Below, piece by piece: positions 14,355-17,240 of a stretch of DNA of 64,000 bases. A program made the translations under genes and the position numbers. Below the pieces are notes generated by a model. The model did not search any database, had not been told where the DNA came from, and saw only the letters and a program-made list of their open reading frames with translations. This DNA comes from Hypanus sabinus (lineage: Eukaryota): the NCBI RefSeq assembly GCF_030144855.1, contig NC_082723.1:63426001-63490000 (forward strand). The letters are read 5' to 3'. Numbering within the stretch: the first letter of the stretch is position 1; each line of letters starts with the position of its first letter.

Positions 14355-16580
14355 ACGGGGTCACTGACCTTTTTTGTACCGCAGACCAGTTTAATATTGA
14401 CAATATTCTTGACGGGGGTGGGGAGGAGGGTGTTAATCACAACCGGAATATAGGTGATAAAAGTCAACTTTAAGTCACTTATAAGTGGCTAATACACTCA
14501 ATTTCATTTCTAAAAGGGTTTATCTAACGAATTTAATATTAAACACAGCACATATTTTCCTCACATGAACATAGTGATAAGTCAATAGCATCATAACATT
14601 TTAAGTAACATTTGGATATAAAACACACAGTGCATATTTTCCTTGAATGAACATATAAAATCATTGCAACACACCAATATCGCTGAATCAGTGGGAGCCC
14701 TGGGCTTGTTTCCCTGCAACAAGACGGTCCCATCGAGGGATGATGGGAGACAGTGATACTCGAAGGGGGTTCCTTATGTCCTGTCTATTCCGCAATTTAG
14801 TTTTCACTGCATTCATTGCAGAAAACCCCACTTCGCAGAGAAATGATGTTGGAAATGGAAGCAACGTTTTCAGTGCTTTCGTGGCTATCTCAGGATATTC
14901 AGCCTTGACATTGATCCAGAATGCCGGCAGAGATGTTATGTCAAACATACTTTTCAGCTCACCGTCATTAGCAAGCTTCAGGAGTTGATCTTCTTCCCGC
15001 GCTGACATGGATGATTCACCAGGGACATTCACAAATGGGTCACGGACCCATTCATTTGCACATCTTGGGTCATTTGCGGTTGGGAAGTAACACTCGAATT
15101 CTGTCATCAGCGAAGATAGGTGATCATGCACCAGCTGTGAGAAGGACGGTGCAGCCTCAGTTTCTCCCAAAATCCCAGCTAATGTTGGGAACATGTCAAA
15201 TATGCCCCTGTCCACTCGCCGTCCCCACAGTTCCAGTTTGGTTTTGAAAGCAGACACTTTATCTGCCAACTTGAAGACAGTTGTCATTCTCCCCTGAAGT
15301 GACAAATTGAGTTCATTGAGCAGGTTGAAGATGTCACACAGATAAGCGAGTTTTGCTATCCACTCCTCGTCACTGAAGTGTGCTGCCAGTGGTGACTTTT
15401 TTCCTGAAAGAAATCTCTGTAGCGGCTCTCTTAACTCAAAAACCCTGGCCAGGGCTCTCCCCCTTGATAGCCACCTGACTTCAGTGTGTAAGACAAGGCG
15501 TTTGTGTTCTGCATCCATTTCCTCGCAAAGCTGCTCAAACAGACGTGAGTTCAGGGCTTTTGCTTTGATGTAATTGATGGCTTCAACAACGTCACTCAAT
15601 ACGCGGTTAAGAACAGGTGACATTTTTCGGCTAGCCAGCATTTCCCTGTGTATGACACAGTGTGTAGACTGGCATTCAGGAGCAACCTCTTTGACTCGGG
15701 AAGTAAAAACAGACAGCCGTCCAGTCATAGCTGCAGCCCCGTCTGTGCATATTCCAACACAGAATGACCAGTCTAATTTGCCTGACATGTAGTCATTCAA
15801 AGACTTGAATAGTTCTGCCCCGGTTGTGTTATTTGGCAGCGGCAGTGTGCACAACATATCCTCATGCACATCGTCTTGAAATATATATCGCACATAAACC
15901 AGCAGTACTGCCTTGTTGTCGACATCGGTAGACTCATCGATCTGGATAGCATACCATGGTGACTCGTTAAGCCGTTCCAACAGCTGTGCTTCAATGTCCT
16001 CCGCTATGTCGTCGATTCTCCTTGAATCTGTGGTACATGCTGAAAGAGAAACCTGTGCCATCTTGATAGCTGCAGCTTCTCCCAACAGTTCACGGCATAT
16101 GTCCTTGGCAGCAGGCAGAATCAATTCTTCACCAATCGTGAAAGGCTGCTTAGCCTTAGCAATACGGCTAGCCACTAAGTACGACGCTCTCAGAGCAGCA
16201 GCATTTGTGGAGGTGGTGGCTCCCAGCACTTGCTTCTGTCTCGCTTGCTCACGTTTTTCCCGCTCAAAAAACTCAATAGGTTTGTCTTTAAGGTCAGGGT
16301 GCTTGGACGCAAGGTGCCGAAGCAGTTTTGAGGGCTTCATTGCCTCATTAGACAGCTTCTCTCCACATATCACACACAGGGGGCTTGGAGCGTGTGGGTC
16401 ACCGGTCGCATTAAAGCCATATCTTATGTATGACTCGTCGTATTTTCTGTTGAAGAAGGCTTTCTTTATTTTTGGTGTCTCGGCCTCAGTTGTCTCTGCG
16501 TTATCGTCGTCGTTAGGCCTTTTATGCCCCCTACCAGCTCTTCCAAACCAAATCTCAAACGGCGTTTGTCCTTTACTCAT
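14355..16580 (-). mobile_element. hAT (Buster/Charlie-type) DNA transposon body with a degenerate 3' terminus and no clear 5' terminal inverted repeat (TIR)
   Basis: acggggtcactgaccttttttgtaccgcagaccagtttaatattg at 14355 resembles a CAGGGGTCCCCAACCTTTTT-type Buster TIR/subterminal. The transposase ORF follows. Confidence 0.7.
14688..16580 (-). CDS. Intact hAT/Buster-family transposase (ZBED5/ZBED8/SCAND3-like), 630 aa
   Basis: BED finger PLCVIC...LRHLASKH; catalytic D (IDESTD), D (TDGAAAM) and E (LCEVGFS); CxxH (HCVIH); HTEVRWLS; C-terminal dimerisation region ending QAQGSH. No stops or frameshifts. Confidence 0.9.
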   Translation of the reverse strand: MSKGQTPFEIWFGRAGRGHKRPNDDDNAETTEAETPKIKKAFFNRKYDESYIRYGFNATGDPHAPSPLCVICGEKLSNEAMKPSKLLRHLASKHPDLKDKPIEFFEREKREQARQKQVLGATTSTNAAALRASYLVASRIAKAKQPFTIGEELILPAAKDICRELLGEAAAIKMAQVSLSACTTDSRRIDDIAEDIEAQLLERLNESPWYAIQIDESTDVDNKAVLLVYVRYIFQDDVHEDMLCTLPLPNNTTGAELFKSLNDYMSGKLDWSFCVGICTDGAAAMTGRLSVFTSRVKEVAPECQSTHCVIHREMLASRKMSPVLNRVLSDVVEAINYIKAKALNSRLFEQLCEEMDAEHKRLVLHTEVRWLSRGRALARVFELREPLQRFLSGKKSPLAAHFSDEEWIAKLAYLCDIFNLLNELNLSLQGRMTTVFKLADKVSAFKTKLELWGRRVDRGIFDMFPTLAGILGETEAAPSFSQLVHDHLSSLMTEFECYFPTANDPRCANEWVRDPFVNVPGESSMSAREEDQLLKLANDGELKSMFDITSLPAFWINVKAEYPEIATKALKTLLPFPTSFLCEVGFSAMNAVKTKLRNRQDIRNPLRVSLSPIIPRWDRLVAGKQAQGSH

Positions 16581-16659
16581 TTTTTACAAAAATATACTTT
16601 ATTCAGAAATATTACAAAATAAAACGATTTACAAACAACATTCGTTGACTGAGTCCTTA

Positions 16660-17240
16660 TTTACTCATACCGCGGCGTCAGCGTGACTGACCCTGGAGTC
16701 GGTCTGCGGCGCACTATGACGTTCAGGATGAAAGGTCAGGGTGTCGTTGCAGCCAATGAGATTTCCGGGTGCTTTGGCGCCATTGAGCCGCGGCACCTTC
16801 GGGCCGGCGGGTAGTGAATGTAGGAGAGTGTTGACGTCTCGGTGCCTTCGTGAAAGCGGTCGTGAACCCGTCGCCGTTTTCTCGTTAGTGTTCACTAGGC
16901 AGTGCCGCCCGACTGGGCCCGAGTGCGAACAATCAGCCAGGGAGTTTCCGTGTCTCGCCCGGCAAGAGAGCGACCCCCGCGCCGCGCCGAGTGGAGCCGG
17001 CTGGCCCGGTGGTCACGTGGGCCGCGGATTCGCGCCAGTTTCAGTCTGAGGTCTGCGCGGGAGGGAGCGCCAGTCGTCAACATGCCCCCGAGAGACTATC
17101 AGAGCGAGAAAGGTGGCTGGGCTCGGTCGGGAGGTGGTTCGTGATGGGGATCTGGCCTCGGCGGAGCCGGTGAACGCGCTGCTTGGGGAAGGGTAGCAAA
17201 CAGAGGGCCGGAGGAAGTCGGGAGAGGGGTGTGGACGGAC
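16660..17240 (+). promoter_or_regulatory. MCM7 CpG-island promoter with E2F, CCAAT and E-box motifs
   Basis: CCAAT 16753-16757; TTTGGCGC (E2F) 16773-16780; CACGTG 17014-17019; TTCGCGCC (E2F-like) 17029-17036; high CpG density around exon 1. Confidence 0.8.
17082..17112 (+). CDS. MCM7: MCM7 exon 1 ([10 protein letters not shown])
   Basis: ATG in the CpG island, 31 nt, donor gtggct; phase fits exon 2. Confidence 0.85.

What the first reader, a model, noticed from the sequence alone, without database searches (positions are those of the whole stretch)
14355..17112. Intact Buster-type transposase head-to-head with MCM7: candidate domesticated gene using the E2F promoter
Seen: every other transposon ORF in the window is broken, yet this 630-aa ORF keeps the BED finger, D/D/E, CxxH, RW and dimerisation motifs. 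Its 3' TIR looks eroded and no convincing 5' TIR or TSD is visible. The ATG (16580) is ~80-100 bp from the CpG island carrying CCAAT, E2F and E-box motifs and ~500 bp from the MCM7 ATG. The segment LSACTTDSRRI appears to carry one extra in-frame residue relative to the usual LSxxTVxRRI. Established: Buster transposases were repeatedly domesticated (ZBED5, ZBED8, SCAND3). Inference: an immobilised copy occupies the divergent slot held by AP4M1 in mammals and could be an S-phase-coexpressed, lineage-specific gene.
Basis: partly seen in the sequence, partly recalled or inferred. Interest (0 to 1): 0.8.

Follow-up and report, generated by a model that had tools for sequence, protein, structure and literature searches.

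The report
Immobilised intact Buster transposase beside MCM7
A jumping-gene (Buster/hAT transposase) copy in the Atlantic stingray genome has lost the DNA ends it needs to move but keeps a complete, apparently selected protein-coding gene 500 bp from the MCM7 start, making it a reasonable but unproven candidate for a transposase turned host gene.

Summary
A 630-aa ORF (14688-16580, minus strand) encodes a complete Buster-type hAT transposase in Hypanus sabinus. The zinc finger, D215/D280/E583, CxxH and RW are all intact. Its ATG lies 502 bp from the MCM7 ATG, beside a CpG island carrying CCAAT, E2F and E-box motifs.

Relatives in teleosts are genuine transposons with perfect TIRs and 8-bp nnnTAnnn TSDs. 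The family has a patchy host range (rays, teleosts, frogs, squamates, spider, bee), and dS is only 0.21 between stingray and teleost copies, which implies horizontal spread.

The window's copy has no 5' TIR, almost none of the family 5' UTR, no TSD and a damaged 3' TIR tip, so it cannot move. Its private changes still avoid family-invariant residues (2.3% against 12.0%, p=6e-6). CpG decay is filtered against amino-acid change (p=0.008), and branch omega is about 0.44. Two other Hypanus copies are decayed fragments, and no near-identical sibling protein was found.

Best reading, at about 50%: a lineage-specific domesticated transposase. Main rival, at about 40%: a fairly recent promoter-proximal insertion that lost its 5' end and inherited its constraint signature from an active lineage. 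No annotated Mobula orthologue lies beside MCM7. Expression from the E2F promoter is untested.

The parts
14348..14355 (-). Flank octamer TTATAACC (read on the minus strand), possibly one half of the original 8-bp target-site duplication
   Evidence: It has TA at positions 4-5, as in the Buster consensus nnnTAnnn (PMC3499496). No second copy exists within 1.6 kb upstream of the ORF.
14356..14369 (-). Degenerate 3' terminal inverted repeat
   Evidence: It reads GGTCAGTGACCCCG where five relatives have GGTTGGGGACC(C/G)CTG. It has 4 private changes in 17 otherwise invariant TIR columns, against 0-1 in the other copies.
14370..14687 (-). Element 3' UTR and subterminal region
   Evidence: blastn and MAFFT show homology to the Centroberyx element L001 down to about 14357.
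14688..16580 (-). Intact 630-aa Buster-type hAT transposase ORF, including the stop codon
   Evidence: It is 90.6% identical in nucleotides to L001.
16581..16626 (-). AT-rich leader, possibly the last remnant of the element's 5' UTR; contains AATAAA (plus-strand TTTATT at 16598-16603)
   Evidence: Homology to L001 stops at 16587. There is a weak match to the L003 5' UTR over 16582-16626, reached by 4 of 200 shuffles. The AATAAA was located.
16627..16752 (.). Sequence of unassigned origin at the edge of the CpG island; no family 5' UTR or TIR is detectable here
16753..17081 (.). MCM7 CpG-island promoter with CCAAT (16753), E2F TTTGGCGC (16773), E-box CACGTG (17014) and E2F-like TTCGCGC (17029)
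   Evidence: GC is 0.59-0.68 and CpG observed/expected is 1.13. Motifs were located.
17082..17112 (+). MCM7 exon 1 coding part ([10 protein letters not shown]), followed by a GT splice donor
   Evidence: The sequence is shown. The annotation lists a 721-aa MCM7 with MCM_N/MCM_OB/MCM/MCM_lid/WHD_MCM7 domains, divergent from the ORF, with CDS starts 502 bp apart.

Best explanation
This is an old, immobilised insertion of a horizontally spreading Buster (hAT) transposon next to the MCM7 promoter of Hypanus sabinus. The copy lost its 5' end: the TIR, nearly all of the 5' UTR and one TSD copy. Its 3' TIR tip has mutated, so no hAT transposase can excise it. These points are shown directly. The ORF stayed complete and its lineage-specific changes were filtered by purifying selection, which is also shown. 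I infer that much of this selection acted after immobilisation, which would make it a stingray-lineage domesticated transposase gene. The most likely mode of action, by analogy with ZBED5 and the other Buster-derived genes, is a zinc-finger DNA-binding protein that oligomerises through its hAT C-terminal domain. Its RNase-H-like domain still carries all catalytic residues. Transcription would have to start in or near the MCM7 CpG island, because the element's own 5' region is gone. This last step is inferred and untested.
For: Immobility: there is no family 5' TIR or 5' UTR upstream of 16587. The sister Mobula copy keeps a canonical 5' TIR about 190 nt upstream of its ATG. No TSD is present. 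The 3' TIR has 4 private changes in 17 invariant columns, against 0-1 in five other copies. Buster ends of 24-64 bp are non-functional or nearly so (PMC12637253).
Constraint: branch omega is about 0.44 (53 synonymous, 77 nonsynonymous changes, p=6e-6). Private amino-acid changes hit 6 of 259 invariant columns against 43 of 359 variable columns (p=6e-6). Decayed Hypanus paralogue P0146 shows 11/107 against 14/128, which is neutral. CpG decay took 7 of 30 synonymous routes against 3 of 68 nonsynonymous routes (p=0.008). The one window-specific indel is in frame.
Age: at variable columns the copy has drifted as far as the dead paralogues in the same genome (12.0% against 10-11%), and the ray clade is star-like. 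The 3' end has 6 private changes in 37 invariant columns. That fits at least 5% neutral divergence and is unlikely at 2.3% or less (p between 0.0003 and 0.011). A neutral ORF would survive 2% divergence with probability about 0.0075.
No siblings: the 90% cluster has one member, and the best fragment hits are 83% (Hypanus) and 80%.
Against: The selected branch includes time before the insertion, when the lineage may have been an active transposon. Transposon-level selection in a family prone to horizontal transfer gives the same signatures. Omega (0.44) is higher than the family background (0.09-0.25). No orthologue at the MCM7 site is annotated in Mobula birostris, and no other ray could be examined. 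Only annotated proteins, not the genome itself, were searched for siblings. Subterminal positions also vary in clearly mobile copies (L005 has 4 private changes, L006 has 3). Three of the window's six 3'-end changes are clustered and may be a single event. Buster insertions favour transcription start sites and CpG islands (PMC3499496), so the location needs no functional explanation. Unchecked scan notes report other intact Buster-type elements in this genome. There are no expression data, and an AATAAA precedes the ATG.
Confidence: 0.5

Rival explanations
1. It is a non-domesticated relic. A member of a long-lived or recently re-introduced active Buster lineage inserted next to the MCM7 promoter because Buster elements favour open, TSS-proximal chromatin. 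A deletion then removed its 5' end and a small mutational cluster hit the 3' tip. The ORF is still open only because little neutral time has passed in a slowly evolving elasmobranch genome. The constraint signatures were inherited from the active lineage.
For: TcBuster prefers transcription start sites and CpG islands (PMC3499496). The family is clearly mobile and prone to horizontal transfer: TIRs and TSDs are perfect in L001, L003 and L005, dS is 0.21 between ray and teleost copies, and the host range is patchy. Only 2.3% of invariant columns have changed, which allows a neutral phase of about 1% divergence. At that level an ORF survives with probability about 0.09. The Mobula sister copy in RNF4 is also intact without any sign of domestication. 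No Mobula orthologue lies beside MCM7. ORF CpG observed/expected is 0.61, close to the young teleost copies (0.65-0.72) and well above the host background of 0.43.
Against: No sibling protein of 90% identity or more was found in Hypanus or anywhere else. The 3' end carries more private changes than about 1-2% divergence predicts (p between 0.0003 and 0.011). DNA transposases act in trans, so within one host lineage they are expected to evolve neutrally (established theory, not tested here). Yet the copy shows constraint over a branch as long as that of the dead paralogues in the same genome.
Confidence: 0.4
2. It is still an autonomous, mobile transposon whose unusual ends are subfamily-specific rather than eroded.
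For: The ORF and all catalytic motifs are intact. The 3' subterminal region is well preserved.
Against: The sister Mobula copy has the canonical 5' TIR, so the ray subfamily used normal ends. The window has no 5' TIR within 3 mismatches and no subterminal 5' motif. It has no TSD. The terminal CTG of the 3' end is disrupted. Short or missing ends abolish Buster transposition (PMC12637253).
Confidence: 0.03

Closest known systems
ZBED5 (Buster1) and Buster2-4 (ZBED7-9, including SCAND3/ZBED9): vertebrate genes domesticated from Buster transposons (PMC3606216)
   Same: It shares the Buster-family transposase architecture: N-terminal zinc finger, RNase-H-like domain with an inserted helical domain, and a C-terminal hAT dimerisation region. 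It has lost its transposon ends and is a single immobile locus. NCBI names its relatives 'SCAN domain-containing protein 3-like'.
   Different: Those genes are ancient and have syntenic orthologues across many vertebrates. This copy has no demonstrated orthologue. It belongs to a family that is still mobile in teleosts, with 86% amino-acid identity to a copy that has perfect TIRs and TSD. It has no added SCAN, KRAB or integrase domain, and it keeps the full DDE triad.
Active Buster transposons (TcBuster, AeBuster1, AnBuster and similar; PMC3499496, PMC12637253)
   Same: It is a single ORF of about 600-680 aa with the DDE triad. Family members are 2.4-2.6 kb with 15-bp TIRs and 8-bp nnnTAnnn TSDs (L001, L003, L005). 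It sits next to a TSS and CpG island, which matches the known insertion preference.
   Different: The window's copy lacks the 5' TIR and 5' UTR, has a mutated 3' tip and has no TSD, so it cannot transpose.
Hermes transposase (PDB 2BW3, 4D1Q, 6DWW)
   Same: It is the best solved-structure match to the family profile. The DESTD, CTDGA and CEVGFS motifs align with the Hermes catalytic D, D and E segments.
   Different: Hermes belongs to the Ac family. The sequence relationship is only distant (E about 0.002), and its TSD rule differs.

Membership tests
hAT superfamily transposase | DDE catalytic triad in an RNase-H-like fold, plus CxxH and RW motifs | tested here: met
   D215, D280, E583, C308/H311 and R369/W370 lie in invariant family columns. 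The family profile aligns them to the Hermes catalytic segments.
hAT superfamily transposase | C-terminal hAT dimerisation region | tested here: met
   Profile positions 546-599 align to Hermes 442-495, including SERTFS. Precomputed PF27046 and, in relatives, PF05699 also hit.
Buster family of hAT | Sequence affiliation with Buster/ZBED5-type transposases | tested here: met
   Precomputed PF27073 (FAM200-ZBED5 RNase-like) hits. Relatives at 44-48% identity are named ZBED5-like, and the tree places the ORF within them.
Buster family of hAT | 8-bp TSD with consensus nnnTAnnn | tested here: met
   Relatives have TACTAAGG (L001), TGTTAGGG (L003) and CTTTAAGG (L005). The consensus comes from PMC3499496. 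In the window only one flank (TTATAACC) can be read; it fits the consensus but is unpaired.
Autonomous mobile transposon | Two matching terminal inverted repeats with subterminal sequences | tested here: not met
   No 5' TIR or 5' subterminal motif is present. The 3' TIR tip has 4 private changes.
Domesticated transposase gene | Loss of TIRs and TSD, i.e. immobility | tested here: met
Domesticated transposase gene | Intact ORF under purifying selection after immobilisation | tested here: inconclusive
   Constraint on the private branch is clear. The branch cannot be split into periods before and after insertion, because DNA of other ray copies was unavailable.
Domesticated transposase gene | Single copy with no recent paralogues | tested here: inconclusive
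   No protein of 90% identity or more was found in a 5.8-billion-protein collection. The other Hypanus copies are 78-83% identical fragments. The genome itself could not be searched.
Domesticated transposase gene | Syntenic orthologues in other species | not testable with these tools
   The two closest Mobula copies lie in RNF4 and at another locus without MCM7. The MCM7 locus of other rays could not be fetched.
Domesticated transposase gene | Expression as a host transcript | not testable with these tools
   No RNA data were available. The gene is called in the public annotation, but the basis for that call is unknown.

The most novel reading that the evidence does not exclude
A stingray-specific host gene was born from a still-circulating, horizontally transferred Buster transposon. 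It retains a fully competent DDE nuclease and is driven by the bidirectional E2F/CCAAT promoter of the replicative-helicase gene MCM7, so a catalytically intact transposase-derived protein would be produced in step with S phase.
Probability: 0.12. Interest if true: 0.7.

Novelty: new member of a known kind. Interest (0 to 1): 0.42.

Why it matters
Buster transposases have been recruited as host genes several times, but all well-known cases are ancient. The early steps (immobilisation, capture of a host promoter, change in selective regime) are therefore rarely visible. If this copy is truly under host-level selection, it would be a young domestication. Mobile siblings of the same family still exist in other vertebrates, which would allow direct comparison of the transposon and gene states. 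If it is only a relic, it still documents cross-phylum horizontal spread of one Buster family into rays. It also documents the promoter-proximal insertion preference of the family in a natural genome.

Tried and rejected
1. A by-eye match between 16680-16745 and the family 5' TIR region (GCCGCAGACC... against GCCGCGGACC...) did not hold up. Local alignment with shuffles was not significant, and pattern searches found nothing.
2. I considered a TIR-like sequence at 17341-17390 as the missing 5' end. It resembles a 3' end of a plus-oriented hAT, lies beyond MCM7 exon 1, and its flanks do not form a TSD with 14348-14355. I treat it as a separate remnant.
3. I tested whether Mobula copies P0002 or P0223 are orthologues. 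P0002 lies inside RNF4, RNF4 is not in the window, and P0223 has no MCM gene within 10 kb.
4. DNA of the ray paralogues could not be fetched because the files were too large. A proper within-ray codon analysis was therefore impossible.
5. A local Pfam scan gave only a weak zinc-finger hit, so I used the precomputed newer Pfam families instead.
6. A single-sequence PDB search found nothing; the profile search did find hits.
7. The 1019-aa ORF was tested as a possible intact transposon gene and turned out to be a minisatellite.
8. The scan's sequence look-up returned nothing.
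Full report
**What is there.** The window carries a 630-aa ATG-initiated ORF on the minus strand at 14688..16580. The assembly is GCA_030144855.1, and hits from the same genome are named Hypanus sabinus. The public annotation already calls the ORF as a single-exon gene. Its divergent neighbour is a 721-aa MCM7 with MCM_N, MCM_OB, MCM, MCM_lid and WHD_MCM7 domains, and the two CDS starts are 502 bp apart. 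In the sequence the MCM7 ATG is at 17082-17084 and exon 1 ends at 17112 before a GT donor. The interval is a CpG island with GC 0.59-0.68 and CpG observed/expected of 1.13. It contains CCAAT at 16753, the E2F site TTTGGCGC at 16773, the E-box CACGTG at 17014 and TTCGCGC at 17029. No other gene is annotated within 10 kb beyond the ORF's 3' end. There is no second copy of the element in the window.

**What the protein is.** Precomputed Pfam hits are PF27073 (FAM200-ZBED5 RNase-like), PF14291 and PF27046. In an alignment of 26 close relatives, D215 (DESTD), D280 (CTDGA), E583 (CEVGFS), C308/H311, R369/W370 and the zinc ligands C69/C72/H89/H94 all sit in invariant columns. A profile of the family finds Hermes transposase as its best solved relative (E about 0.002). 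It aligns the three acidic motifs with the catalytic segments of Hermes and the C-terminus with the dimerisation region. The N-terminal GRG...DDDNAE insert and the V-to-D change in TTDSRRI are shared with a Mobula fragment. They are therefore traits of the ray subfamily.

**The family is a mobile, horizontally spreading Buster transposon.** The closest full-length relatives are Mobula birostris (87%), the teleost Centroberyx (86%) and an unnamed Logan contig (81%). Beyond these come teleosts, dendrobatid frogs and squamates at 70-77%, a spider at 71% and a bee at 60%. The tree mixes these hosts freely. Three teleost copies for which I could fetch DNA are textbook insertions. L001 is 2554 bp with TIRs CAGCGGTCCCCAACC/GGTTGGGGACCCCTG and TSD TACTAAGG. 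L003 is 2440 bp with TSD TGTTAGGG. L005 is 2406 bp with TSD CTTTAAGG. All three TSDs fit the Buster rule nnnTAnnn (PMC3499496). Between the stingray ORF and the Centroberyx ORF, nucleotide identity is 90.6% and dS is only 0.21. By established knowledge, that is far too low for vertical descent since the split of cartilaginous and bony fishes. The family therefore reached rays or teleosts by horizontal transfer.

**The window's copy cannot move.** Homology to L001 runs from 7 nt upstream of the ATG (16587) through the ORF and 3' UTR to about 14357. The 3' terminus is at 14356, and its flank TTATAACC has the TA expected of a Buster target. Upstream of 16587 there is no family sequence. blastn, MAFFT, shuffled-control local alignment and mismatch-tolerant pattern searches found no 5' TIR, no 5' subterminal motif and no second TTATAACC. 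Only a weak 45-nt similarity to one relative's 5' UTR remains, at 16582-16626.

This loss is specific to the window's copy and is not a subfamily peculiarity. The chimeric Mobula gene model reads through the sequence upstream of its transposase ATG. The resulting peptide (SGPQPSG...KACATGPRGN) is the translation of the canonical 5' TIR seen in L001, about 190 nt upstream of the ATG. At the 3' tip the window has 4 private changes in 17 columns that are invariant in five other copies, including loss of the terminal CTG. The other copies have 0-1 private changes there. Experiments on another Buster element show that 24-bp ends are non-functional and a 41-64-bp left end is nearly so (PMC12637253). 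Immobilisation is therefore well supported.

**Selection on the ORF.** I polarised substitutions with two outgroups. The window's branch since its split from the Centroberyx lineage has 53 synonymous and 77 nonsynonymous changes. That gives omega of about 0.44, below 1 at p=6e-6. Omega on the Centroberyx branch is about 0.25, and pairwise values elsewhere in the family are 0.09-0.15.

A test that needs no DNA from the paralogues gives the same answer. The window's private amino-acid changes hit 6 of 259 columns that are invariant in 17 non-ray relatives, but 43 of 359 variable columns (2.3% against 12.0%, p=6e-6). Two other Hypanus copies, P0121 and P0146, are annotated only as fragments. They carry DESTD-to-DKSTD, R-to-W/C/Q/H changes and internal deletions. 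Their ratios are 0.50 and 0.94, with P0146 fully neutral.

CpG decay is the signature of residence in a methylated vertebrate genome. On the window's branch it removed 7 of 30 sites through synonymous routes but only 3 of 68 through nonsynonymous routes (p=0.008).

**How old is the insertion?** This decides between the two live explanations, and I could only approach it indirectly.

Several observations point to an old insertion. The ray copies form a star-like clade. The window's terminal branch is 0.092, the dead Hypanus fragments have 0.12 and 0.14, and the Mobula copies about 0.05. At variable columns the window has drifted as far as the dead copies. The 3' end has 6 private changes in 37 columns invariant in five other copies. 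That fits at least 5% neutral divergence and is unlikely at 2.3% or less (p between 0.0003 and 0.011, depending on whether a 3-change cluster counts as one event). No protein of 90% identity or more exists in the collection for the full length, the middle or the C-terminal third. With 4.4% of random substitutions creating stops, and a conventional indel rate, an unselected ORF would survive 2% divergence with probability about 0.0075 and 3.6% with about 0.0002.

Other observations point to a young insertion. Only 2.3% of invariant columns have changed, so a neutral phase of about 1% is allowed. ORF CpG observed/expected (0.61) is close to that of young teleost copies (0.65-0.72) and well above the host background of 0.43. 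Clearly mobile copies also show 3-4 private subterminal changes. Neither Mobula copy is at the MCM7 site: P0002 lies within RNF4, which is absent from this window, and P0223 has no MCM gene nearby.

**Verdict.** I put about 0.5 on a lineage-specific domesticated transposase, meaning selection on the ORF after immobilisation. I put about 0.4 on a non-domesticated relic of a fairly recent promoter-proximal insertion, with constraint signatures inherited from an active or horizontally moving lineage. The remainder covers other readings, including a still-mobile element (about 0.03).

The position by itself is not evidence of function, because TcBuster favours transcription start sites and CpG islands (PMC3499496). 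Use of the E2F promoter is plausible, since the element's own 5' region is gone and the ATG lies 173 bp from the CCAAT box. It is nonetheless wholly untested. An AATAAA on the ORF strand 18-23 nt before the ATG could terminate upstream-antisense transcripts early.

**Caveats.** Polarisation used parsimony with few taxa. Paralogue comparisons rely on annotated protein fragments. Unannotated copies in the genome are invisible to these tools. Notes from the scan that other intact Buster-type elements of about 2.9 kb exist in this genome are unchecked. They probably concern another family, because no Hypanus protein appears among the 120 listed full-length hits, which reach down to 44% identity.

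Noticed in passing
window 17341-17390 (+), MCM7 intron 1: A 50-nt stretch (GAATATCGTAAATATTAA...ACCAGTCTGCAGTTCTTACTG) resembles the subterminal 3' end of this hAT family in plus orientation and ends in CTG. It is probably a separate old hAT remnant. The similarity is weak (reached by 1 of 200 shuffles).
   Followed up: partly
Mobula birostris protein P0002 (no DNA held): The annotated 785-aa 'RNF4 isoform X1' is a chimera in which RNF4 N-terminal exons run into a Buster copy. The junction lies at the element's 5' TIR, whose CAG may serve as the splice acceptor. The model then reads in frame through the 5' UTR into the transposase.
   Followed up: partly
window 50202-53122: A 35-bp minisatellite of 83.5 copies at 97% identity creates a spurious 1019-aa ORF on the minus strand.
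   Followed up: yes
L001, L003, L005, L006 flanks: TSDs of this family (TACTAAGG, TGTTAGGG, CTTTAAGG, and a TGTTAGGG flank in L006) all end in GG after the central TA. This hints at a target preference more specific than nnnTAnnn. The window's flank TTATAACC does not share it.
   Followed up: no
family-wide: The same Buster family, at 70-87% amino-acid identity, occurs in rays, many teleosts, dendrobatid and other frogs, squamates, the spider Parasteatoda and a halictid bee. This is a wide cross-phylum horizontal-transfer pattern.
   Followed up: partly
window 12900-13500: This tract has very strong G-over-C skew (up to 0.75) and A-over-T skew, just downstream of the element's 3' flank. Its nature was not examined.
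   Followed up: no
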